Below are positions 1-49,347 of a stretch of DNA of 64,000 nucleotides, piece after piece (the first letter of the stretch is position 1; the number at the start of each line of letters is the position of its first letter). This DNA comes from Octopus sinensis (lineage: Eukaryota): assembly GCF_006345805.1 (NCBI RefSeq), contig NW_021831846.1, forward strand, positions 1 to 64,000, given 5' to 3'. Below the pieces are notes generated by a model, which worked only from the letters and a program-made list of their open reading frames with translations, was not told the DNA's origin and made no database searches. The position numbers and the translations under genes were made by a program.

Positions 1-2407
1 GGCAACAGCATAGAATTGAAGCATCCATCTCTTTCTTCTCTCAATTTAGAATGAGGAAATTTGGATGTTGAAGTAATGTAAATAAATTAATTAATAAATA
101 CATATATAGACGTGAAGGAACCTGGTAATAAGAGTAAATAGGGGTAAAGATGGAGGGCGAGAATTCAGGACGAAGGATAAAAAATATATAAAAAGTGTAA
201 GTATAGAAAATATAAAAATGTAGAGTATAAAGATATAAAGAGATATAAGGAGATATAAAGGGGATATAAAGAATATAAAAAAATATAAATGAATATAAAG
301 GCATAAAGTTATAAAGTAAAAATAGAAATAGAAATAAAAGTAAAAAAATAAAAATAGGAATGAAAATGATAAAAATGTAAAAAGATATAAGGATAAGGGA
401 TGTATAGTGGTTACGGACCAAACATGGTGGTCAGGAAAATGACAAAATTTAGTTGTAGAAGTTTTGGGTGTCAATAAATCAACAGGGGCGTCTGGGGACC
501 TAGTGTATTGTAAATCAGAGCTGTTGAGCAGTTAATCTAGTTCCTTGAATTAAGTGGTCATCTTGTACATACATACCAGCATGGATACATACACCTATAT
601 ACACGCGTGCATACACAGCTCCAAGCATATAAGCATACATACGTACTCACGTGTAAACATGTACATAAACACATATACACCCACACACATGCGCATATAT
701 ACATACATACAACAGAATATGCGCATATATACACGGACATTATACGTGTACATATATATATAAATACATATATACACACACACGCACATACACATATAAA
801 CACATACACATATGCATACATATATGCACATGTATACCTATACATATATACGCATATACACACACCTATATATACATACGTACGTCCATCCTTACATACA
901 CATACACAGATGCCCACACATACAGGTTTAGATATAAGATATTAAAAGATGTATATAAGAACGCATGTAAAGAATCACGCACTCACGTCTACACGTGCAC
1001 GCACACACGGCTGTGTGTCCATATGTGCGTGCACATATACACTTACATACACATACAGAGACATACGCGCGTATAGGTATAGCTATAAGATATTAAAAGA
1101 TGTATACAAATATGTGTAAATATGTGTAAATATGTGTACATATGTACGAGTAAACACCTACGTCTGGATGTGCATACCCCGTTACTCTTCTTTAATAATT
1201 TTCTTTATTAATTTTTTTTAAATTTCTTACGTGTTTCTTTACACTTTTTTACATGTTTTCGCAGATTTCTTATATGCATATGTTTATACATATTTGTATA
1301 CATCTTTTAATATCTTATAGCTATACCTATACGCGCGTATGTCTCTGTATGTGTATGTAAGTGTATATGTGCACGCACATATGGACACACAGCCGTGTGT
1401 GCGTGCACGTGTAGACGTGAGTGCGTGATTCTTTACATGCGTTCTTATATACATCTTTTAATATCTTATATCTAAACCTGTATGTGTGGGCATCTGTGTA
1501 TGTGTATGTAAGGATGGACGTACGTATGTATATATAGGTGTGTGTATATGCGTATATATGTATAGGTATACATGTGCATATATGTATGCATATGTGTATG
1601 TGTTTATATGTGTATGTGCGTGTGTGTGTATATATGTATTTATATATATATATGTACACGTATAATGTCCGTGTATATATGCGCATATTCTGTTGTATGT
1701 ATGTATATATGCGCATGTGTGTGGGTGTATATGTGTTTATGTACATGTTTACACGTGAGTACGTATGTATGCTTATATGCTTGGAGCTGTGTATGCACGC
1801 GTGTATATAGGTGTATGTATCCATGCTGGTATGTATGTACAAGATGACCACTTAATTCAAGGAACTAGATTAACTGCTCAACAGCTCTGATTTACAATAC
1901 ACTAGGTCCCCAGACGCCCCTGTTGATTTATTGACACCCAAAACTTCTACAACTAAATTTTGTCATTTTCCTGACCACCATGTTTGGTCCGTAACCACTA
2001 TACATCCCTTATCCTTATATCTTTTTACATTTTTTATCATTTTCATTCCTATTTTTATTTTTTTACTTTTATTTCTATTTCTATTTTTACTTTATAACTT
2101 TATGCCTTTATATTCATTTATATTTTTTTATATTCTTTATATCCCCTTTATATCTCCTTATATCTCTTTATATCTTTATACTCTACATTTTTATATTTTT
2201 CTATACTTACACTTTTTATATATTTTTTATCCTTCGTCCTGAATTCTCGCCCCTCCATCTTTACCCCTATTTACTCTTATTACCAGGTTCCTTCACGTCT
2301 ATATATGTATTTATTAATTAATTTATTTACATTACTTCAACATCCAAATTTCCTCATTCTACATTGAGAGAAGAAAGAGATGGACGCTTCAATTCTATGC
2401 TGTTGCC
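1..2407. repeat. Large near-perfect palindrome (arms 1-1115 and 1288-2407, spacer about 170 bp; left arm cut by window edge)
   Basis: Position 1 GGCAACAGCATAGAATTG is the reverse complement of the sequence ending at 2407; mirrored ORFs 554..763/1327..1851 and 91..474/1931..2242; a few substitutions and a 1-nt indel. Confidence 0.95.
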
Positions 2408-10490: not shown

Positions 10491-10921
10491 TTAGTTAGTT
10501 TTTTGGCTCAAAAAGCAAAAAGCATGGCCATGTAGGGGGACATGGAGTTATGTACAGGGTGGTGTTCATGTAAAGAGTTCAGGCCATTTGTGGTCAAGGG
10601 AGACTTTGAACCGAGTGGTCGTCGGCATCTTCACTATCTCGTCCAGCAGTTTATTCCACGGATCCGCAACCCGGACGGAGAAAGCCCCTCTCCTTCGATT
10701 GAGATGAAATCGTCGCAGACAGAGCTTTTCGGAGTGACCCCGCAGCCGACGCTCTGGAGCAGGAGTGAAGAACAGCTCTTTCGAGAGGTTACACTTTCCG
10801 CTTATGATGTTGTGAGCAAGAATGAGATCACCACGGCATCGTCGTTTTTCTAGAGAATAAAGGTCGAGCGTCTTCAGCCTTTCTCCATAAGACAAATGCT
10901 TGAGACCAAGAACCATGCGGG
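10491..10921 (-). mobile_element. CR1-clade LINE 3' fragment
   Basis: ORF 10566..10916 (SYGERLKTLDLYSLEKRRCRGDLI...RLRGHSEKL...FSVRVADPWNKL); (TAAC)n tail. Confidence 0.88.
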
Positions 10922-10946
10922 TATCACCGCTAGCGGGGACACGCTA

Positions 10947-15649: not shown

Positions 15650-16195
15650 ATCATCATCATCATCAACAACATCATTCATCATCATCATTGTTCGACCGTG
15701 GTCGAGACAATGGAATTTACCATGCTACGCCAGACTTCACGGTCCATCATGGCATTACGGAGGTCCTGTTGCTGGATGCCTGTATCCCTGGAGATTACAT
15801 CAGGGTAGGAGAGTGTACGCACTCTGGTATTGCGAGTAGATGGCTTCCAGAGGAGAAGAGTAGAAATTACTTCTTTTTCAGCTCTACAACAATGTCCAGC
15901 AAACTGGACTCTCCTACCTTTCACAAGAGATGACACAGGTGGTAATTTCCCATATATTTGCATTTTGGTTGGATGGCGCTTCCATGAGAGATTTTGAGCT
16001 CTCATAAGGAGCGAGTGTAGGTTCCATCCAACCACCTCTCAAGCTTCTTTGATAACGTCCAGGTTTCTGAGCCATATAGTAGAATTGGTTCGACTGTGGC
16101 TTTGAAGATTTCAAGTTTGAAGTCTCTACTTAGATTTGATGACCAGATCTTATGCATGTCATTACAGGCTGACCAGGCCATACCCTTTCAACATT
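15650..16195 (-). mobile_element. RTE-type LINE 3' fragment
   Basis: FKATVEPILLYGSETW, RRVQFAGHC, DREVWR; (TGA)n tail. Confidence 0.8.
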
Positions 16196-16372: not shown

Positions 16373-17312
16373 TCTATTTCTTTACTACCCACAATGGGCT
16401 AAACACAGAGGGGACAAACAAGGACAGACAGAGGGATTAAGTTGATTACATCGACCCCAGTACGTAACTGGTACTTAATTTGTTGACCCCGAGAGGATGA
16501 AAGGCAAATTCATCCTTGGCGGAATTTGAACTCAGAACGTAGCGACAGACAAAATACCTATTTCTTTACTACCCACTAGGGGCTAAACATAGAGTGGACA
16601 AACAAGGACAGATAAGGGATTAAGTCGATTACATCACCCCCAAGTGCGTAACTGGTACTTAATTTGTAGACTCCGAAAGGATGAAAGGCAAAGTCGACCT
16701 CGGCGGAATTTGAACTCAGAACGTAACAGCAGATGAAATACAGCTACGCATTTTGCCCGGCATGCTAACGTTTCTGCCAGCTCGCCGCCTTATGCGACAC
16801 CATCATCAGTGCTTCTTAGGCGACACCAGCACCCACACCAATAAATTTTGTGTGGCACCTTGGCTTGAAGATCTCAATTCCGTTAATAATGATCAAATGT
16901 TTGCACTGTACATAAGCTCGCTGCCCCCATCAAATTGACATTGCTTAAAAAGGTGCACAGTGTACCATACGTTAAGTATCAAAGTGATTGCAGAGGAATT
17001 GAAACCCTGATCTCACAATCATGGGTACAACACCCTAACCACTAGGCTATGTGCAATCATTACACAGACATTGATTAACCTATTTCTTTACTACCCACAA
17101 GGGGCTAAACACAGAGAGGACAAACATGGACAGACTAACGGATTAAGTCGATTATATCGACCCCAGTGCGTAACTGGTACTTATTTAATCGACCCTGAAA
17201 GGATGAAAGGCAAAGTCGACCTCGGCGTAATTTGAACTCAGAACATAATGGCAGACGAAATACCGCTAAGCATTTTGCCCGGCGTGCAAACACTCCTGCC
17301 AGCTCGGCGCCT
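16373..17312 (-). mobile_element. Cluster of SINE family D copies (partial tandem 16373-16790; 17080-17312)
   Basis: Head GGCGGCGAGCTGGCAGA...GAGTTCAAATTCC; other copies near 8105, 29000-29228, 40835-41060, 57525. Confidence 0.72.
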
Positions 17313-24547: not shown

Positions 24548-24717
24548 CGTAAATGTAAGGTTAATGCCGCCTTTGTCTTTCCGCCGGAAATGGATGTTTG
24601 GTGGAGACTTGTTCAATCGGATCCCAAAGCCTTCTAATTCATATTCTATGAGCTTCTTGTGTTGTAAAGGTTTTAGCACATCAAGAACAATGAAAATCAA
24701 GCTGCAGGTTCGTGCCA
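24548..24717 (-). CDS. DRG1: DRG1 coding exon 5 (V-ARTCSLIF...GGINLTFT)
   Basis: ORF 24536..24718; acceptor TAG, donor GTGAGT. Confidence 0.97.
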
Positions 24718-30521: not shown

Positions 30522-31011
30522 ATCATCATCATCACTGCTGCTGCTGACACTACAATTATTGCTGTATCTCTAACTCTCGACTGGCAGACTGCAACTTCTA
30601 CATCAGTGGTTTTCAACCAGGGTTCCACCAGCACAGTCCAGGGGTTCCGCAAGAAGTTACATAAATGCTAAAATCGACAGTAATTTCTAATTCTCCTCTG
30701 CAGATATTTGTGTACATGTTAGGCCTACGTGTACATCTACGAGTTGCACACCAGCGTAGATGACCTTGATCCTTGGTGTGTATATGTAGGCCTCCGACGT
30801 GTACAACTACGAGTTACACGCCAGCGTAGATGACCCTGATCCTTGGTGTGTACATGTACGTGCACATCTACGAGTTGCATGTCAGCTTAGATGATGGTTT
30901 AGTTCTCTTTTGTAAAATACAAGTGACTATATTTGGAAGAAACGTTTTAACAGCGTAAGCCATTTAGGTGTTGTTGTTAATACGCCTTTTAAGAGATCTT
31001 TAGAAGAGTTA

Positions 31012-31729
31012 TTGACCTTTTGTTTGCAAGAAAACCCGAAAGACTTTGTAGAATGTTTGAGTGATGACCATTGGTGTTCCAAGTTAGCATATCTTGCCGA
31101 TATATTTCATGAGTCAAACCTCTTGAACAATGGCATGCAGAGCAGGAACGAAAATATCTTGTCTTCTACTGACAAAATAAATGCTTTTCAGAAGAAATTG
31201 GCAACATGGAAGAAACGCATAGCTGCAGGAAATTTGGAAATGTTTCCAAGTGTTTTTAATAGGAATTGTCAAGAAATTGCGCTACTGATTTTGAACCATT
31301 TGCACACTGTTAACAAATCTTGACAAATATTTTCCACCGATATCTGTTGACCAGTATGACTGGATTAGAAACCCATTTGTGGAATTTGAGCCATTTGAAG
31401 AACAGTTCCCATTAACAGAAGAAGAACTTGCCAGTGCTTTAAATGACAGAACATTAAAGTTGAAGCATTCTGAGCTTCACCTGAATGCATTTTGGTTGCT
31501 GGTTGAAAAGGAATATCCTGCAATCGCACAGAAAGCGCTGCGACTTCTTGTGCAGTTTTCAACCTCCTACTTGTGTGAATTTGGATTTTCAGCCCTGACA
31601 ACCATCAAGCACAAGAAGCGAGCACTATTGCTGTCTGTGGAAGATGAACTTCGTGTGTGTCTATCAAAAACACGACCCAATCTTAAAGAATTGTGCAAGA
31701 AACACCAGGCTCAAGTTTTGGTTCAATGA
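31012..31729 (+). pseudogene. Frameshifted C-terminal hAT transposase including the dimerisation domain
   Basis: ORFs 31012..31323 (WCSKLAYLADIF...KINAFQKKLATW) and 31379..31729 (FSTSYLCEFGFSAL...ELRVCLS...KHQAQV). Confidence 0.88.
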
Positions 31730-31860
31730 GCTCCCATCTCAGTTTAGCCAGACAGGCTTTTAGTAGCCCTAAGTGACCCATGGTCGCTTTGTTCCTCTGA
31801 GTCCTGGCCATCTAAATAACAAACGAGCATAATATTAATGTTATCATTAGTGCAGTCAAT
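31716..31860 (-). pseudogene. DRG1: Duplicated fragment of DRG1 exon 2 plus intron 1 acceptor, inside the hAT element
   Basis: Matches 37468-37612 (offset 5752) with 4 substitutions in 145 bp; AG|ATGGCC acceptor at 31813-31811 intact. Confidence 0.95.
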
Positions 31861-33039
31861 TTTTGATGAGAATAAATGTAATCTATTCAAACTAAAGCTT
31901 TTTTAAATACATGTTTTAATAATAACTGTAGATGCTTATGTACGTGACAATTTTTTTACAGTTTGTGTTTTTATTGTAAATAAATATGAACAGGAGTATT
32001 TTCGTTTCATTAATTAAATGCTGTTTTTTGCATAAGACAAATTATTGCACAGGGGTTCCTCGAGCCAATGGAATGTTTCCTTGGGGTTCCGCTCCAGCAA
32101 AAAGGTTGAAAAGCACTGTTCTACACTATCAACTACCATCATCATCATCGTTTAATGTCCGCTTTCCATGCTAGCATGGTTTGGACGATTTTGACGGAGG
32201 GCTGGCGAACCAGATGGTTGCACCAGGCTCCAATCTTGATCTGGCAGAGTTTCTACAGCTGGATGCCCTTCCTAACGCCAACCACTCCAAGAGTGTAGTG
32301 GGTGCTTATTACGTGCCACCAGCACGGGGGCCAGTCAGGCAGTACTGGCATTGACCTCGCTCGAATCCTTTTACACATGCCACCAGCACAGGTACCAGTA
32401 AGGCGACTTTGGTAACGATCACGCTCAAATGGTGCCCTTTTTACATGCCCACTGGCACGGAAGCCAGTTGGCTGCTCTGGCAACGATCACGCTCGGATGG
32501 TGCTCTTGGCACCCTACTAGCACGGGCACCAGCGAGCAAACTTGTTACTGCCACTACAATTATTGCTGTATCTCTAACTATATGTCGGACAAACGAATAA
32601 ATATATGTAAGTAATATTTCTTCCTTTTTGGTGTTGATTCTTCAATGCTTACTGGTTACACCAACACAAGACCCCCGCCCAAAAAAACAAAGCGTGTAAT
32701 ATGCAGCACAGGCAGTAAACAAAAATAAAATAGAACAGATTGCTGACATTTAGTAGAGATGACCCGGAAGTTGTTGCTCTTCAATTACTATCACAAACAG
32801 CAGAAGCTTTCTTCAGCTGAATACACATTGCTGATTGGTTGAAATTACCCAAATACGACAACTTTAACACAAAATAATTTCTAAAATATGAAATTTTGTC
32901 AAAAATGTTGAAAGTAAACTGTGTTCAGCGTGAGAATTTACACCAGTATACGAAGTTTCAAACTGTTTAGTTAAAAAAATGATCTAAAGATCTGTGAGTG
33001 AAACTGAAGAGATTCTCAAAAAGTGTGGCCGTTAAATCA

Positions 33040-34310: not shown

Positions 34311-34380
34311 CTGCAATAACTTGTTTTCCTCTTCCTTTTCCATCCTTAGCACCCTCAATAATACCTGGTAAATCTAATAA
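34311..34380 (-). CDS. DRG1: DRG1 coding exon 4 ([24 protein letters not shown])
   Basis: Manual translation of reverse strand; acceptor CAG, donor GTAACA; G3 DLPG. Confidence 0.96.
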
Positions 34381-35742: not shown

Positions 35743-36295
35743 GTTAGTTAGTTAATTTTTGGCTCAAAAAGCAAGGCCATGTAGGGGGACATGGAGTTAT
35801 GTACAGGGTGGTGTTCATGTAAAGAGTTCAGGCCACTTGTGGTCAAGGGAGACTTTGAACCGAGCGGTCGTCGGCATCTTCACCATCTCGTCCGGCAGCT
35901 TATCCCACGGATCCGCAACCCAGACGGAGAAAGCCCCTCTCCTTCGATTGAGATGAAATCGTCGCAGATAGAGCTTTTCGGAGTGACCCCACAGCCGACG
36001 CTCTGGAGCAGGATTGAAGAACAGCTCTTTCGAGAGGTTACACTTTCCGCTTATGATGTTGTGAGCGAGAATGAGATCACCACGGCGTCGTCGTTTTTCT
36101 AGAGAATAAAGGTCAAGCGTCTTCAGCCTTTCTCCATAAGACAAAGTCTTGAGACCAAGAACCATGCGGGTAGCCAGCTCCTGGACTCTTTCGAGATGCT
36201 GTATGTCTTTGAGGAGATAAGGAGAAGAGGCTTGAATCCCGTACTCCAATATGGGTCTCACCAGCGTGACATAGAACGTGCTGAATAAGATTTAA
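35743..36295 (-). mobile_element. CR1-clade LINE 3' fragment
   Basis: ORF 35815..36261 (RPILEYGIQASSPYL...LERVQ...RRGDLI); (TAAC)n tail. Confidence 0.9.
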
Positions 36296-37397: not shown

Positions 37398-37563
37398 CTA
37401 CAAAACCAATTCGTGCATCTCCAGTCTTGGCGACGTCAAAGCCCTCACCACCACCTCCACCGCCGCCTTTTGGTTCAATGAGCTCCCGTCTCAGTTTAGC
37501 CAGACGGGCTTTTAATAGCCCTAAGTGACCCATGGTCGCTTTGTTCCTCTGAGTCCTGGCCAT
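37398..37563 (-). CDS. DRG1: DRG1 coding exon 2 (MARTQRNK...RIGFV-G)
   Basis: ORF 37357..37563; acceptor TAG before ATG, donor GTTGGT, phase 1. Confidence 0.97.
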
Positions 37564-38280
37564 CTAAATAACAAACAAGCATAATATTAATGTTATCATT
37601 AGTGCAGTCAATCAAGTGCTTAGCTGTATTTCATCTGGGGTTTTGTGTTAGGAGTTCAAATCTTGCTGAGGTCAACTTTACCTTTCGGCCTTTCAGAGGT
37701 CGATAAAATAAAGTACCAATGAAGTACTAAGATTGATATAATCAACTAACTATGAATCCCTAAAATTGTTAGCCTTGTGCCAAAATTTGCAATTTATCAT
37801 TATTATCAATAAAAAATAAGGCAGTGATCTGGCAGAATCATTAGCACTTCAGACAAAATATTTAGCATCATTTCCGCTGGCTTTGCATTCTGAGTTCAAA
37901 TTCCGTTAAGATCAATCTTGGTTCTCATCCTTTTGGGGTTCATCATGGTTTTTTTCTATGCTTGGTATGGGCTGGACAGTTTGACCAGAGCTGGGAAGCT
38001 GCACCAGGTTCCGGTCTGATTTGGCTTGGCTTCTATGGCTGGATGCCAACCACTTTACAAGGGTGTGCTGGATGCTTGTAACATGCCACTGGCACAAGCG
38101 GTTTTAAGTGGCACCAGCATGAATGCTTTTTATGTGGCACTGGCATAGGACCCTTACAGGCCAATGCTCTTCACCAGGGGACGCGGCCTTAACACTTCTG
38201 CTATGGAGGACTGGCCTTCTTGAGTACAGCAAGGCGCTAGGCATCTTGGTCCTAAGCACTGAGATCAATGTAATTGACCA

Positions 38281-39975: not shown

Positions 39976-41060
39976 TTCTTGGTTCTTGCTGCATAACAAA
40001 TTAAACCTTGATGTAATATTTGACACTGCTGGACGTAGAGCATCTTCTATGGTTTTCAATGTTGAACAATATTTGGTTTTAATAAGGGTTAAAACTGAAA
40101 AAACACATCTTAAGTGCCCCTCTCTGATTACTAAGTCCTGCTTGAACAGACTTTGTAGCATTGCCATCCGTGTCATTACTTTTGTTACTCAAGTTCAGAC
40201 ATTTAGCCATGAGTAAAAATATTTTTATTTTGAAATATAAATAAAATGTTTCATAAAATAATTATCTTGGGCAAATGTCTTCTGCTATAGCCCCGCGACG
40301 ACCAATGCCTTGTGAGTGGATTTGGTAGATGGAAACTGAAAGAAGCTTGTCGTGTTTGTCCCCCTAGCATTGCTTGACAAACGATGCTGGTGTGTTTACG
40401 TCCCCGTCATTTAGTGGTTCGGCAAAAGAGACCGATAGAATAAGTACTGGGCTTACAAAGAATAAGTCCTGGGGTCGATTTGCTCGACTAAAGGCGGTGC
40501 TCCAGCATGGCCGCAGTCAAATGACTAAAACAAGTAAAAGAGTAAAAGAGAAAGAGAGACCTAAATCGAATAAAACTTTAACAGGTATTGTTATTTATAC
40601 ACTTATTAAGGTGAACACAAACTAACTATGCTGAAAATAGATATCTTGTCACTGCACTAGTTGCAACGGTGCTGCATGTGCATTTTATTACTGCAGCACT
40701 TGCATGGTGCATCACGTTAAATATTGTGCATTTGTGAAATAACGTATAAACTGAAATTCAGGTGTTTGAATTTAATTTTCGTGACCCATAGTTTAAGAAG
40801 CACTGATTTATATCAATAATATTTACTTTCTTATTTCTTTATTGCTCATAAGGGGCTAAACACACAGGGAACAGACAAGGACAAAGGGATTAAGTCGATT
40901 ACATCGACCCCAGTATGTAACTAGTGCTTAATTTATCAACCCCGAATGGATGAAAGGTAAAGTCGACCTTGGTGGAATTTGAACTCAAAACGTAACAGCA
41001 GACGAAATACCACTAAGCATTTCGCCCGCTGTGCTAACGATTATGCCAGCTCGCCGCCTT

Positions 41061-41372
41061 CATCATCATTGTTTGACCGTGGTCGAGACAATGGAATTTA
41101 CCATGCTACGCCAGACTTCACGGTCCATCATGGCATTACGGAGGTCCTGTTGCTGGATGCCTGTATCCCTGGAGATTACATCAGGGTAGGAGAGTGTGCG
41201 CCCTCTGGCATTGCGAGTAGATGGCTTCCAGAGGAGAAGAGTAGAAATTACCTCTTTTTCAGCTCTACAACAATGTCCAGCAAACTGGACTCTCTTACCT
41301 TTCACAAGAGATGACACAGGTGGTAGTTTCCCATATATTTGTACTTTGGTTGGATGGCGCTTCCACGAGAGA
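41061..41372 (-). mobile_element. RTE-type LINE 3' fragment (same family)
   Basis: ORF 41066..41383. Confidence 0.8.
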
Positions 41373-41748
41373 TTAGAAGGCATAAAAACTCAAATTTGTA
41401 GAAGTTTTGTTGATTAAATAAACCCCAGTATTTTATTGGTACTTTATCTTATCGTATCTCGAAGAAATGATAAGTAACACTCAAATCTGAAGGATTTATA
41501 CTCAGAAAGTAAAGAGCTTGAAGCTATACCAAGACTTTCTGTCCAACACTGATTACTGTGAGGGGTAAGAAGCTTCCTAACCACACATGGTTTTGTGTTC
41601 CCTCTCACAGCATGGTAGGTAACTTAGTTAAGTGTTGCCTGCTATAACCAAGGGCTGATCAAAGCCTTGTATGTGGATTTAGTAGGCAGAAACTGAGAAA
41701 TATATATATGTATGTGTGCGCATGAGTGTGTGTGTATTTATATATGTA

Positions 41749-43168: not shown

Positions 43169-43672
43169 CCTCAATAGACGTCATTGATTGGTTGAAATTG
43201 CAGAAATTGAAGAAAAAAAACAACAAATATTATCTTACAAACCATTGAATTTTCTTAATAAAGCCAAGAGAAAAAGATGTTTTATAAACACATTCTACCA
43301 GTATTCGAAGTTTAAAATTTTTTAGTTACCTAGAAATTATGTTAAAAACTGCCGTTCAAACCGAAAAGATCCGAGTAAAGTACCGTATGCCGGTAGAAAT
43401 TTAAAAAGTTAGTGCTGTTACTCCACATACTAAAGACTTGTGAAGCTTACAGTGTCTAAAGATCGATTCTCCCCCTTCAGCACCATCATCATCAGCGCCA
43501 TCATCATCATAACACTGAATTGACCGTCAATGGGATTGAAGCTCTCATCTCTCACCTATTCAGAGAAAACGATACATCATCATCATCATGTATCGTCTGA
43601 TCTAAAGTGGTGAAAGATGGGAGCTTCAATCTCATTGACGATCATTTCGGTGTTATCTTGTCCTGCTGTTCT
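43169..43672. repeat. 504-bp direct duplication, copy 1 (half MITE plus flank)
   Basis: Apparently identical to 48844-49347 (offset 5675 at both ends). Confidence 0.93.
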
Positions 43673-44737: not shown

Positions 44738-46591
44738 GGTTAATATAGGGTGTAACAAATATCAGAAAATCAAAAAAAAAATGTGTGTAATAGGTGTAAA
44801 ACAACTTCCTATGAACGAATATGAAAAAAAAAATTCGCGCACGCGAAAGGGGGGTGGGGGAGAGGCCTCGGAAAATTCACATCGGGAAGTTCCGAAAGCG
44901 TCTGAGGGGCTGACCCGGGCACCAAAACAAAAAAAAAATAGTGTAATATGTGTAAAACAACTTGCTCTAAACGAATATGACAAAAAAAAATGCGGTCTCG
45001 CGAAAGAGGGGTGGGGGAGAGGCCTCGGAATATTTATATCGGGAATTTCCGAAAGCGTCTGAACCGGCACAAAAACAAAAACAGCGTAATAGGTGTAAAA
45101 CAACTTGCTCTAAACGACTATCATGAAAAAAATGCGCGCTCGCGAAAGGGGGTGTGGGGGAGAGGCTTCGGAAATTTCACATCTTCAGTCCACGGCCTTT
45201 AAACTAAGAAAAAATAGTGTAATTGGTGTAAAACTACTTGTTCTAAACGAGTATCAAGAACACACACTCACACATGAATCATAAACTCCGTATTTCGCAA
45301 AAAAAAAATAAAGAGAAGAAATTCTGGAAAAAGTGAAGAAATGTTGGATCTCATTCCTTGGTTAAAGCTATTTTAAACATTAAATTTATGCTTTTCTTTG
45401 AAATAGTTCAGATATATGCAATTCTTCTCACTTATTAAGATGCATTTATCAGAAAAAATTATTATTTTGTGTCAATCCTTCCCTAATTATCCTTTATTAA
45501 TTAGTTTTGGCGTGTATTTTTTTACCTTTACAACACTGTTTAGTAAAGCAATTAATTATCTTTATAATTTGCATATTTGACTTATTAATCAAAATTCTCT
45601 AGATGTAATATATACTAAGTAATGCATCCTTCATTTATGTGTTCCGTTCTGTAAGTGTGTTTAACTGTGCACATGAATGTGAATATTAAAGAACATATTT
45701 ATTTACTATGATTGTTATTTTCAGAACAAATAAATCTTTTGGCTGTTATGTTATTGATGTTATTATTATTGCTAGTTAAAGGGTGGTGACTTGGCTGAAT
45801 ATTTTGAGTCTTGTAGTATGTAGTTGTGTTAGTCAATATTCTGAGTTCAAATCCAACTCATTTCTTTATCATCATTATCGATGGACCACTCAAAGAGGTA
45901 TGTATACATTATCATTTTCGTAACATAATTTCTGTAGTATTTCAAGATGTTTCTGACACGTATTTTGATTCACATGGCGGAGATCCAACATTTCTTCACT
46001 TTTTCCAGAATTTCTTCTCTTTATTTTTTTTTTTGCGAAATACGGAGTTTATGATTCATGTGTGAGTGTGTGTTCTTGATACTCGTTTAGAACAAGTAGT
46101 TTTACACCAATTACACTATTTTTTCTTAGTTTAAAGGCCGTGGACTGAAGATGTGAAATTTCCGAAGCCTCTCCCCCACCCCCCTTTCGCGAGCGCGCAT
46201 TTTTTTCATGATAGTCGTTTAGAGCAAGTTGTTTTACACCTATTACGCTGTTTTTGTTTTTGTGCCCGGTTCAGACGCTTTCGGAAATTCCCGATATAAA
46301 TATTCCGAGGCCTCTCCCCCACACCTCTTTCTCGAGAGCGCATTTTTTTTTCATATTCGTTTAGAGCAAGTTGTTTTACACATATTACACTATTTTTTTT
46401 TGTTTTGGTGCCCGGGTCAGCCCCTCAGACGCTTTCGGAACTTCCCGATGTATTTTTCCGAGGCCTCTCCCCCACCCCCCTTTCGCGTGCGCGAATTTTT
46501 TTTTTCATATTCGTTCATAGGAAGTTGTTTTACACCTATTACACACATTTTTTTTTTGATTTTCTGATATTTGTTACGCCCTATATTAACC
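44738..46591. mobile_element. Foldback-type non-autonomous DNA transposon, about 613-bp modular TIRs, 8-bp TSD GTCTTTCG
   Basis: Arms 44738-45352 and 45980-46591 built from 130-160-bp subrepeats (GTGTAAAACAACTT); TSD at 44730-44737 and 46592-46599; AT-rich spacer. Confidence 0.88.
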
Positions 46592-47835: not shown

Positions 47836-47874
47836 CTCATTTTCAATTTCGGCAATTTTTTCTAGTACACCCAT
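47836..47874 (-). CDS. DRG1: DRG1 coding exon 1 (MGVLEKIAEIENE)
   Basis: Reverse strand ATGGGTGTACTAGAAAAAATTGCCGAAATTGAAAATGAG followed by donor GTAATA; phase 0 joins exon 2; matches DRG N-terminal helix. Not in the ORF track (too short). Confidence 0.9.
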
Positions 47875-48598: not shown

Positions 48599-49047
48599 GG
48601 ATCTTTTCGGTTTGAACGGCAGTTTTTTCTAGCTGCGTCATATGAAATTGTCACCCACAATTATGACCCTAGAATCGATCTATTGCATTTCAATCTATTT
48701 TAGGATTAGGGTTAGTTAGGGTTAGGGTTAGGGGTGGGGCGAAGGGTATCTTTTTTTTTTCTTCACAAATGTAAATAAACCCAGTCTGTTTCTTAAACGA
48801 GGGACATATTCATTCATACGGCACAGAATGTTTTTTTTTCTTACCTCAATAGACGTCATTGATTGGTTGAAATTGCAGAAATTGAAGAAAAAAAACAACA
48901 AATATTATCTTACAAACCATTGAATTTTCTTAATAAAGCCAAGAGAAAAAGATGTTTTATAAACACATTCTACCAGTATTCGAAGTTTAAAATTTTTTAG
49001 TTACCTAGAAATTATGTTAAAAACTGCCGTTCAAACCGAAAAGATCC
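48599..49047. mobile_element. Same MITE family, atypical 13-bp TSD GAGTAAAGTACCG
   Basis: TIRs; duplication at 48586-48598 and 49048-49060. Confidence 0.9.
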
Positions 49048-49347
49048 GAGTAAAGTACCGTATGCCGGTAGAAATTTAAAAAGTTAGTGCTGTTACTCCA
49101 CATACTAAAGACTTGTGAAGCTTACAGTGTCTAAAGATCGATTCTCCCCCTTCAGCACCATCATCATCAGCGCCATCATCATCATAACACTGAATTGACC
49201 GTCAATGGGATTGAAGCTCTCATCTCTCACCTATTCAGAGAAAACGATACATCATCATCATCATGTATCGTCTGATCTAAAGTGGTGAAAGATGGGAGCT
49301 TCAATCTCATTGACGATCATTTCGGTGTTATCTTGTCCTGCTGTTCT
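48844..49347. repeat. 504-bp direct duplication, copy 2
   Basis: See 43169-43672. Confidence 0.93.

What the first reader, a model, noticed from the sequence alone, without database searches (positions are those of the whole stretch)
31716..31860. A hAT transposon in DRG1 intron 4 carries a copy of DRG1 exon 2 with its splice acceptor (candidate poison exon)
Seen: 145 bp matches 37468-37612 (96 nt of exon 2 plus 49 nt of intron 1) with 4 substitutions, two of them CpG-to-TpG (R to C, R to W). It sits 5752 bp from the source, in the same orientation as the gene, exactly at the transposase C-terminus (HQAQV then LVQ*), joined through a T-run microhomology. It includes intronic sequence, so it is DNA-templated rather than a retrocopy. 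If exon 4 spliced to the copied AG (31813-31812), the frame would reach TAA after 22 codons. Inference: a local templated insertion during break or gap repair (Pack-like capture) created a decoy acceptor that could tune DRG1 through NMD.
Basis: partly seen in the sequence, partly recalled or inferred. Interest (0 to 1): 0.8.

Follow-up and report, generated by a model that had tools for sequence, protein, structure and literature searches.

The report
DRG1 exon-2 fragment copied into intronic transposon
A 141-145 bp piece of the octopus DRG1 gene (end of intron 1 plus start of exon 2) was pasted, as DNA-repair "filler", into a dead hAT transposon 5.75 kb downstream in intron 4 of the same gene; the copy looks real and old, but there is no evidence that the transposon moved it or that it is ever spliced.

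Summary
Window 31716-31860 matches 37468-37612 at 141/145 with sharp edges. It covers 49 nt of DRG1 intron 1 and the first 96 nt of exon 2, in gene orientation, inside a hAT element in intron 4. The window is Octopus sinensis GCA_006345805.1.

The host element (30604-32118) has 15-bp TIRs and an 8-bp TSD. It is a dead, Ds-like deletion derivative. Four other family copies, two from the same genome, show the empty site CAAGTTT-CTCATTGAG-TTTTTGATGAG and lack the insert.

The event is therefore a private 141-nt templated insertion that replaced 9 bp, with 3-nt and 1-nt junction microhomologies and no TSD. That is the classic deletion-plus-filler footprint of break repair or replicative template switching, copied from 5.75 kb away. 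All four differences are transitions and three are at CpG sites, which argues against an assembly artefact.

"Pack-like capture" is not supported, because nothing shows mobilisation. The poison-exon idea is arithmetically right (TAA after 22 codons), but the copy carries no donor. The acceptor is the weakest type in the gene, and 28 other AGs in the intron score as well. No database protein uses the junction. This is an ordinary kind of event in a neat configuration. Interest is low to moderate.

The parts
31716..31860 (-). Copied DRG1 block: 49 nt of intron 1 (31860-31812, including polypyrimidine tract, AG at 31813-31812 and branch-point-like motifs) plus the first 96 nt of exon 2 (31811-31716). 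Unambiguous filler is 31719-31859; 31716-31718 (TTT) and 31860 (T) are junction microhomology.
   Evidence: 141/145, E=2e-66; empty site; branch-point motifs, substitutions
37468..37612 (-). Source: authentic intron 1 / exon 2 boundary of DRG1 (exon 2 = 37563-37398)
30604..32118 (+). Host element: 1515-bp non-autonomous hAT (octopus FAM200A/ZBED5-like, Buster/Charlie-type) deletion derivative. It retains only the C-terminal ~240 codons of transposase, broken by a stop/frameshift near 31323.
30604..30618 (+). 5' terminal inverted repeat CAGTGGTTTTCAACC
32104..32118 (+). 3' terminal inverted repeat GGTTGAAAAGCACTG
30596..30603 (.). Left 8-bp target-site duplication TTCTACAT
32119..32126 (.). Right 8-bp target-site duplication TTCTACAC (7/8 match)
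30996..31010 (+). Junction of the ~1.56-kb internal deletion of the element (…TCTTTAG|AAGAGT…, 2-nt microhomology AG) relative to fuller copies L011 and L012
31744..31746 (-). TAA reached after 22 codons if exon 4 (phase 1) were spliced to 31811
34311..34380 (-). DRG1 exon 4 (donor CAG|GTAACA), the upstream exon for the hypothetical decoy splice
24548..24717 (-). DRG1 exon 5, the normal partner of exon 4; intron 4 = 34310-24718
47836..47874 (-). DRG1 exon 1 coding part (MGVLEKIAEIENE, donor GAG|GTAATA)
31473..31483 (-). Best cryptic 5' splice-site candidate downstream of the decoy acceptor (CAG|GTGAAG, last exonic base 31481, would give a 331-nt exon). Weaker candidates at 31571 and 31706. No evidence of use.

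Best explanation
This is a lineage-specific DNA-repair scar. A hAT deletion derivative was already resident, and dead, in intron 4 of Octopus sinensis DRG1.

A break, or a stalled replication end, occurred at the last codons of its transposase remnant. Nine bp (CTCATTGAG) were lost. The left 3' end (...CAAGTTT) paired by 3-nt microhomology (TTT) with the DRG1 intron-1/exon-2 boundary 5.75 kb away on the same chromatid or the sister. About 141 nt were copied, and the new end rejoined the right side of the break through 1-nt microhomology (T).

This is 'filler DNA', a templated insertion by synthesis-dependent end joining, SDSA with template switch, or a FoSTeS/MMBIR-type switch.

Shown: the duplication, the empty site, the 9-bp deletion, the microhomologies, the absence of a TSD or poly(A), privacy to this copy, and post-event decay by transitions.

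Inferred: the order of events, the priming end, and which pathway acted.

The copy carries a complete 3' splice site, so it is a potential pseudo-exon acceptor. Most likely it is silent or used only at noise level.
For: - Duplication 141/145 with sharp edges.
- Four other family copies (L001 O. bimaculoides; L002 ENA; L011 and L012 O. sinensis) read CAAGTTT-CTCATTGAG-TTTTTGATGAG at this position. None contains any of the 141 nt.
- Both T-runs pre-exist in the empty site, so they are microhomology, not a TSD.
- Family proteins end ...KKHQAQVSH*.
- The element is a bona fide hAT with TIRs and an 8-bp TSD. It is a deletion derivative with a separate 1.56-kb deletion junction 713 bp away from the filler.
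- There is no larger 5.7-kb tandem duplication in the locus.
- All 4 differences are transitions and 3 are at CpG, which is the decay expected of real, aged DNA.
- Precedent: filler of 1-123 bp with deletions at DSB/excision sites in rice (PMC4423477); filler in 13% of barley deletions attributed to SDSA (PMC3706897); templated insertions by SD-MMEJ (PMC2943611).
Against: - Only one assembly of this locus could be examined. L003 is byte-identical to the window, and the O. bimaculoides orthologue has N gaps over exon 2 and in intron 4. Presence in other individuals or species is therefore unverified.
- 141 nt copied from 5.75 kb away is longer and more distant than typical Pol-theta templated inserts, so the exact pathway is uncertain.
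- It cannot be excluded that the filler arose during gap repair after an excision attempt of this element, which would make it transposon-triggered rather than incidental.
Confidence: 0.8

Rival explanations
1. Transposon-mediated capture (Pack-like transduplication). The DRG1 fragment was acquired during abortive gap repair after excision of the hAT. This would be the same kind of event that made the internal deletion, and the element then is, or was, a vehicle for the fragment.
For: - The element is a Ds-like deletion derivative with a microhomology deletion junction.
- Maize Ds elements carry filler that is occasionally genic (PMC3260210).
- By established knowledge of Ac/Ds, hAT elements transpose preferentially to linked sites.
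Against: - The filler is not at the internal-deletion junction but 713 bp away, at its own 9-bp deletion.
- The insert is absent from 4 of 4 other copies, including two in the same genome.
- The copy lies 5.75 kb from its source in the same orientation, as expected if it never moved.
- No genome-wide DNA search was possible, so a small subfamily cannot be excluded.
Confidence: 0.1
2. Functional poison exon. The copied acceptor is used, exon 4 splices to 31811, a cryptic donor downstream completes a cassette exon, and the TAA triggers NMD, tuning DRG1 output.
For: - The acceptor, polypyrimidine tract and branch-point-like motifs are copied intact, with one T->C at -14.
- In-frame TAA after 22 codons.
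- Cryptic donors exist (CAG|GTGAAG giving 331 nt; CAA|GTAGGA giving 241 nt), with scores in the range of the authentic donors.
- The decoy lies 2.5 kb after exon 4, ahead of the true acceptor 9.6 kb away.
Against: - No donor was copied.
- The exon-2 acceptor has the weakest PPT of the gene's 8 acceptors, and 28 of 544 AGs in intron 4 do as well or better.
- The copy is decaying by CpG transitions with no sign of constraint.
- No protein in the 5.8-billion-sequence database continues into the decoy frame, and exact look-ups of junction ORFs found nothing.
- No RNA data were available.
Confidence: 0.06
3. Assembly artefact: a chimeric read or mis-polish placed exon-2 sequence into the intron-4 transposon.
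For: - Only one assembly could be inspected.
- The genome is extremely repeat-rich.
Against: - The junctions are clean, with microhomology and a matching 9-bp deletion.
- The copy differs from the source by 4 transitions (3 at CpG) and no indels, the opposite of long-read error profiles.
- An artefact would be expected to be identical to its source.
Confidence: 0.04
4. RNA-templated repair. Nascent unspliced DRG1 pre-mRNA, which runs through both the source and the break site, served as the template instead of DNA.
For: - The source is transcribed and includes the intron, so it would be present in pre-mRNA.
- The break site lies within the same transcription unit, so nascent RNA is physically close (sequence layout).
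Against: - Nothing distinguishes it from DNA templating here.
- There is no poly(A) and no splice signature.
- By general knowledge, DNA-templated filler is much the commoner route.
Confidence: 0.03

Closest known systems
Filler DNA / templated insertions at double-strand-break repair junctions (SDSA with template switch, SD-MMEJ/Pol-theta end joining, FoSTeS/MMBIR)
   Same: A small deletion at the target, an insertion that is a copy of sequence elsewhere, 1-3 nt junction microhomologies, and no TSD or poly(A). Fillers up to 123 bp are reported in rice (PMC4423477), and 13% of barley deletions carry filler (PMC3706897).
   Different: 141 nt from 5.75 kb away is at the long and distant end for Pol-theta-type inserts. 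The template is a functional splice-acceptor/exon boundary of the very gene that hosts the break.
Maize Ds2 / Ds-like elements with genic filler (hAT superfamily; PMC3260210)
   Same: A hAT deletion derivative with TIRs and an 8-bp TSD, carrying a fragment with exon plus intron copied from genomic DNA.
   Different: In maize the donor genes are on other chromosomes, so the elements moved or captured in trans. Here the donor is 5.75 kb away in cis, the insert is private to one copy, and there is no sign of mobilisation. This is also an animal (cephalopod) genome, whereas transduplication was described as unknown in animals in 2008 (PMC2572040).
Pack-TYPE transposons (Pack-MULE, Pack-CACTA; PMC8903248)
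   Same: A non-autonomous TIR element with a host gene fragment between its ends.
   Different: Pack elements are defined by amplification or mobilisation of captured fragments. That was not found here.
Intronic pseudo-exons / poison exons derived from transposons or duplications
   Same: An intact 3' splice site deep in an intron, followed by an in-frame stop.
   Different: There is no copied 5' splice site, no transcript evidence and no conservation. Known regulatory poison exons are typically conserved and demonstrably included.

Membership tests
hAT superfamily transposon | Terminal inverted repeats beginning CA(G) | tested here: met
   CAGTGGTTTTCAACC at 30604 and CAGTGCTTTTCAACC (reverse complement) at 32118; the same termini occur in L001, L011 and L012
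hAT superfamily transposon | 8-bp target-site duplication | tested here: met
   TTCTACAT / TTCTACAC (7/8) flank the element. L011 and L012 also have 8-bp TSDs.
hAT superfamily transposon | Transposase with hAT C-terminal dimerisation domain | tested here: met
   The window remnant gives only a weak PF05699 match (E=0.095, below cut-off). Relatives at 77-89% identity carry PF27046 (FAM200-GTF2IRD2-like), PF27073, PF14291 and PF05699, and are named FAM200A-like/ZBED5-like.
hAT superfamily transposon | Autonomy (intact transposase ORF) | tested here: not met
   1.56-kb internal deletion, a stop/frameshift near 31323, and a replaced C-terminus. It is a non-autonomous, decayed copy.
Templated (filler-DNA) insertion from break repair | Insert is a copy of another genomic sequence | tested here: met
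   141/145 identity to 37468-37612
Templated (filler-DNA) insertion from break repair | Empty site known, with loss of target bases | tested here: met
   4 paralogous copies show CAAGTTT-CTCATTGAG-TTTTTGATGAG; the 9 bp are replaced in the window
Templated (filler-DNA) insertion from break repair | Junction microhomology; no TSD, no poly(A) | tested here: met
   TTT on the left and T on the right. Both T-runs pre-exist in the empty site, and there is no A-tail.
Templated (filler-DNA) insertion from break repair | Orthologous empty site in a sister lineage or other individuals | not testable with these tools
   The O. bimaculoides locus has N gaps. No O. vulgaris DRG1 locus or second O. sinensis assembly could be retrieved.
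Pack-like / transduplicating transposon | Host gene fragment between the TIRs of a non-autonomous element | tested here: met
   The DRG1 block lies at element positions 1113-1257 of 1515
Pack-like / transduplicating transposon | Captured fragment carried to other loci (multiple copies, or element distant from the donor) | tested here: not met
   Absent from 4 of 4 other copies, 2 of them in the same genome. The element is 5.75 kb from its donor. This is not exhaustive, as no genome-wide DNA search was available.
Poison (NMD-inducing) cassette exon | Functional 3' splice site | tested here: inconclusive
   The sequence is identical to the exon-2 acceptor except T->C at -14, with branch-point-like motifs at -24 and -36. 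It is also the weakest PPT class in the gene, and 28 other AGs in the intron are as good.
Poison (NMD-inducing) cassette exon | Functional 5' splice site | tested here: inconclusive
   Not copied. Cryptic candidates lie at 31481, 31571 and 31706, scored with a rough PWM only.
Poison (NMD-inducing) cassette exon | Premature stop in frame on inclusion | tested here: met
   TAA at 31746-31744 after 22 codons from exon 4, phase 1
Poison (NMD-inducing) cassette exon | Observed inclusion in transcripts, increased on NMD inhibition | not testable with these tools
   No RNA-seq access. The indirect check was negative: no protein in the database extends into the decoy frame.

The most novel reading that the evidence does not exclude
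The copied acceptor is actually used. An intragenic repair accident gave Octopus sinensis (and perhaps the O. vulgaris complex) a new NMD-coupled pseudo-exon in the housekeeping GTPase gene DRG1. This would be a datable birth of a poison exon by duplication of a constitutive exon's own 3' splice site. A variant reading is that sense transcripts of the hAT remnant carry 96 nt of antisense DRG1 exon 2 and feed small-RNA pathways against the host gene.
Probability: 0.06. Interest if true: 0.6.

Novelty: new member of a known kind. Interest (0 to 1): 0.22.

Why it matters
As it stands, this is a clean, fully resolved example of deletion-plus-filler repair in an animal germline. The template is known (5.75 kb away in cis), the empty site is known, and the microhomologies are known. 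That makes it useful as an illustration, and as a reminder that a gene fragment inside a transposon need not mean transposon-mediated capture.

It would matter more in two cases:
- If the junctions turned up in other hAT copies, it would be a rare case of hAT transduplication in an animal.
- If RNA data showed splicing into the decoy, it would show how a poison exon can be born from a gene's own splice site.

Neither case is supported at present.

Tried and rejected
1. Independent assembly of the locus. The DRG1 protein look-up returned only the same O. sinensis contig, byte-identical to the window.
2. Orthologous empty site in O. bimaculoides. That locus has N gaps exactly over exon 2 and inside intron 4, so it is uninformative.
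3. Exact look-ups of the junction-spanning ORFs (116 aa on the + strand, 42 aa on the - strand) found nothing on record.
4. A spliced DRG1 product is not accepted by the look-up of encoding contigs.
5. Homology search with the hypothetical exon 1-4 plus decoy isoform. No hit extends past residue 135. The near-identical Logan hits P0270 and P0265 turned out to be intronless ORFs from unrelated compact genomes or transcripts.
6. A larger ~5.7-kb tandem duplication of the locus was rejected. The only other pair at a similar offset is an unrelated 504-bp repeat.
7. The idea that the family consensus contains the DRG1 block was rejected by 4 copies.
8. The source edge at 37612/13 abuts an old repeat. 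O. bimaculoides is colinear through that edge, so the repeat predates the event and the coincidence carries no mechanistic weight.
9. The deleted TCATTGAG resembles TCAATGAG just inside the copied block (7/8). I noted it as possible homeologous pairing but did not test it statistically.
10. Literature search for the O. sinensis assembly method returned nothing usable.

Full report
**Observation**

Window 31716-31860 and 37468-37612 are 141/145 identical without gaps. Identity drops to background immediately outside both edges. Within the window the block occurs only twice (blastn E=2e-66). No larger duplication of about 5.7 kb surrounds it.

**Gene context**

tblastn with a DRG1 probe and manual splice-site placement give a 9-exon, all GT-AG model on the minus strand:

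| Exon | Coordinates |
|---|---|
| 1 | 47874-47836 |
| 2 | 37563-37398 |
| 3 | 35592-35462 |
| 4 | 34380-34311 |
| 5 | 24717-24548 |
| 6 | 20073-19888 |
| 7 | 17597-17485 |
| 8 | 15380-15258 |
| 9 | 14631-14532 |

The 365-aa product is identical to Octopus sinensis DRG1 XP_029654632.1. The retrieved O. sinensis locus (GCA_006345805.1, VCDQ01004990.1) is byte-identical to window 48874-13532. That identifies the source genome.

The duplicated block is therefore the last 49 nt of intron 1 plus the first 96 nt of exon 2, copied in gene orientation into intron 4. That is 2.5 kb downstream of exon 4 and 5752 bp from its source.

**The host element**

The block lies in a 1515-bp element (30604-32118). 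Its features are:
- TIRs CAGTGGTTTTCAACC and GGTTGAAAAGCACTG.
- An 8-bp TSD, TTCTACAT / TTCTACAC.
- On the plus strand, only the C-terminal ~240 codons of a transposase, interrupted near 31323.

Its relatives are abundant in O. sinensis, O. bimaculoides and O. vulgaris. They are named FAM200A-like or ZBED5-like and carry the FAM200/GTF2IRD2-like, DUF4371 and hAT-dimerisation Pfam domains. Fuller copies of about 2.96 kb (L011, L012) show that the window copy has a clean 1.56-kb internal deletion with a 2-nt microhomology junction near 31003. The element is thus a decayed, Ds-like, non-autonomous hAT.

**The empty site**

Family proteins end ...[13 protein letters not shown]-stop. I retrieved four other DNA copies:
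- L001, O. bimaculoides
- L002, an ENA assembly
- L011 and L012, both O. sinensis

All read ...CACCAGGCTCAAGTTT-CTCATTGAG-TTTTTGATGAGAATAAATG..., and none contains any of the DRG1 block.

In the window, the 9 bp CTCATTGAG (Ser-His-stop) are replaced by T-GGTTCAATGAG...GCAGTCAA. Against the source (...GCCTTTTGGTTCAATGAG...GCAGTCAAT|CAAG...), this means:
- 31719-31859 (141 nt) is unambiguous filler.
- TTT on the left and T on the right are junction microhomologies.
- Both T-runs pre-exist in the empty site, so there is no target-site duplication.
- There is no poly(A).

The deleted TCATTGAG resembles TCAATGAG just inside the copied block (7/8). It may have helped the initial pairing, but I did not test this.

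**Mechanism**

Deletion plus templated filler with 1-3 nt microhomology is the classic footprint of non-conservative break repair. The candidate pathways are SDSA with template switch, synthesis-dependent MMEJ, and a replicative template switch (FoSTeS/MMBIR). Comparable events are documented:
- Fillers of 1-123 bp with flanking deletions in rice (PMC4423477).
- Filler in 13% of barley deletions (PMC3706897).
- Templated insertions in Drosophila SD-MMEJ (PMC2943611).

The left end, with 3 nt or more of pairing, is the likelier primer. This is an inference. The length (141 nt) and distance (5.75 kb) fit strand-invasion-type copying better than short Pol-theta snap-back, but the pathway cannot be fixed from sequence.

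**Is the transposon causal?**

Maize Ds elements do occasionally carry genic filler, a feature that study calls rare for hAT (PMC3260210). Transduplication was described as unknown in animals in 2008 (PMC2572040).

Here, however:
- The insert is private to one copy.
- It sits in cis next to its donor, in the same orientation.
- It occupies its own 9-bp deletion, 713 bp away from the element's internal-deletion junction.

Introns of this gene are largely made up of interspersed repeats, so a random intronic break could easily fall in a repeat-derived sequence such as this element.

I therefore rate incidental in-situ repair as most likely (about 0.8) and transposon-triggered capture as a minor rival (about 0.1). 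A genome-wide search for the junctions would decide between them, and it was not possible with these tools.

**Artefact?**

Only one assembly could be examined. The O. bimaculoides orthologue has N gaps over exon 2 and within intron 4. Exact look-ups of junction ORFs found nothing.

Internal evidence nevertheless favours a real, aged event. All four differences are transitions with no indels, and three are at CpG sites:
- Two are CpG->TpG in the copy (R->C and R->W, at residues conserved in DRG1).
- At the third (31825), the copy retains CG where the source now has TG.

At 2.8% divergence, against roughly 7-12% for aligned O. sinensis / O. bimaculoides intron blocks, the event is probably younger than that split.

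**Poison-exon hypothesis**

The arithmetic is right. Exon 4 ends in phase 1, and G + ATGGCC... reads [22 protein letters not shown], then TAA at 31746-31744.

In favour: the acceptor is intact (one T->C at -14), with branch-point-like motifs at -24 and -36.

Against:
- The copy stops 70 nt short of exon 2's donor, so any cassette exon needs a cryptic donor. Candidates exist at 31481, 31571 and 31706, but they were scored only with a rough PWM.
- The exon-2 acceptor has the weakest polypyrimidine tract of the gene's eight.
- On a crude criterion, 28 of 544 AGs in intron 4 are as good or better.
- The copy shows decay rather than constraint.
- A search of 5.8 billion proteins with the hypothetical exon 1-4 plus decoy isoform found no sequence extending past residue 135.

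Function as a tuned NMD switch is therefore speculative (about 0.06). Low-level noise splicing is possible, but untested.

**Verdict**

Pack-like capture is not supported, and the poison-exon role is untested. This is a new example of a well-known kind of event in a tidy configuration. Interest is low to moderate.

Noticed in passing
window 43169-43672 and 48844-49347: A 504-bp direct repeat, 100% identical, 5675 bp apart. It brackets DRG1 exon 1 (47874-47836) and presumably the promoter. There are no gag/pol-sized ORFs between the copies, and an inner inverted repeat lies at 44738-45352 / 46591-45980 (98%). It could be a very recent segmental duplication, a non-autonomous LTR-like element enclosing the first exon, or an assembly artefact.
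   Followed up: partly
window 1-2407: A near-perfect 1.13-kb palindrome (1-1132 vs 2407-1271, 98.9%) built from TG/TA-rich microsatellite-like sequence.
   Followed up: no
L004 2756-2999 and 6522-7444 (O. bimaculoides GCA_001194135.2, CM046625.1): Assembly gaps fall exactly on DRG1 exon 2 and inside intron 4. This explains why XP_014775625.1 is annotated as partial, and it prevents use of this species as an outgroup for the event.
   Followed up: yes
window ~30996-31010 (element position ~400): The hAT copy carries a separate 1.56-kb internal deletion with 2-nt microhomology relative to the 2.96-kb copies L011 and L012. This copy has therefore suffered two independent microhomology-type rearrangements.
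   Followed up: yes
window 30709-30894: Three tandem ~68-bp subterminal repeats (about 80% identical) in the 5' region of the hAT element. They are also present in L001, L011 and L012, and may be transposase-binding subterminal repeats.
   Followed up: no
window 37613-37750: The source block ends exactly where an old dispersed repeat begins (about 74% identical to 16623-16753 and 40893-41022). O. bimaculoides is colinear across this edge, so the repeat predates the duplication and the coincidence is probably meaningless.
   Followed up: partly
window 10516-10923 vs 35765-36172; 15679-15993 vs 41060-41374: Further young dispersed repeat pairs (96-97% identical) lie in and around DRG1, alongside many SINE-like copies. 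Introns here are largely made of interspersed repeats.
   Followed up: no
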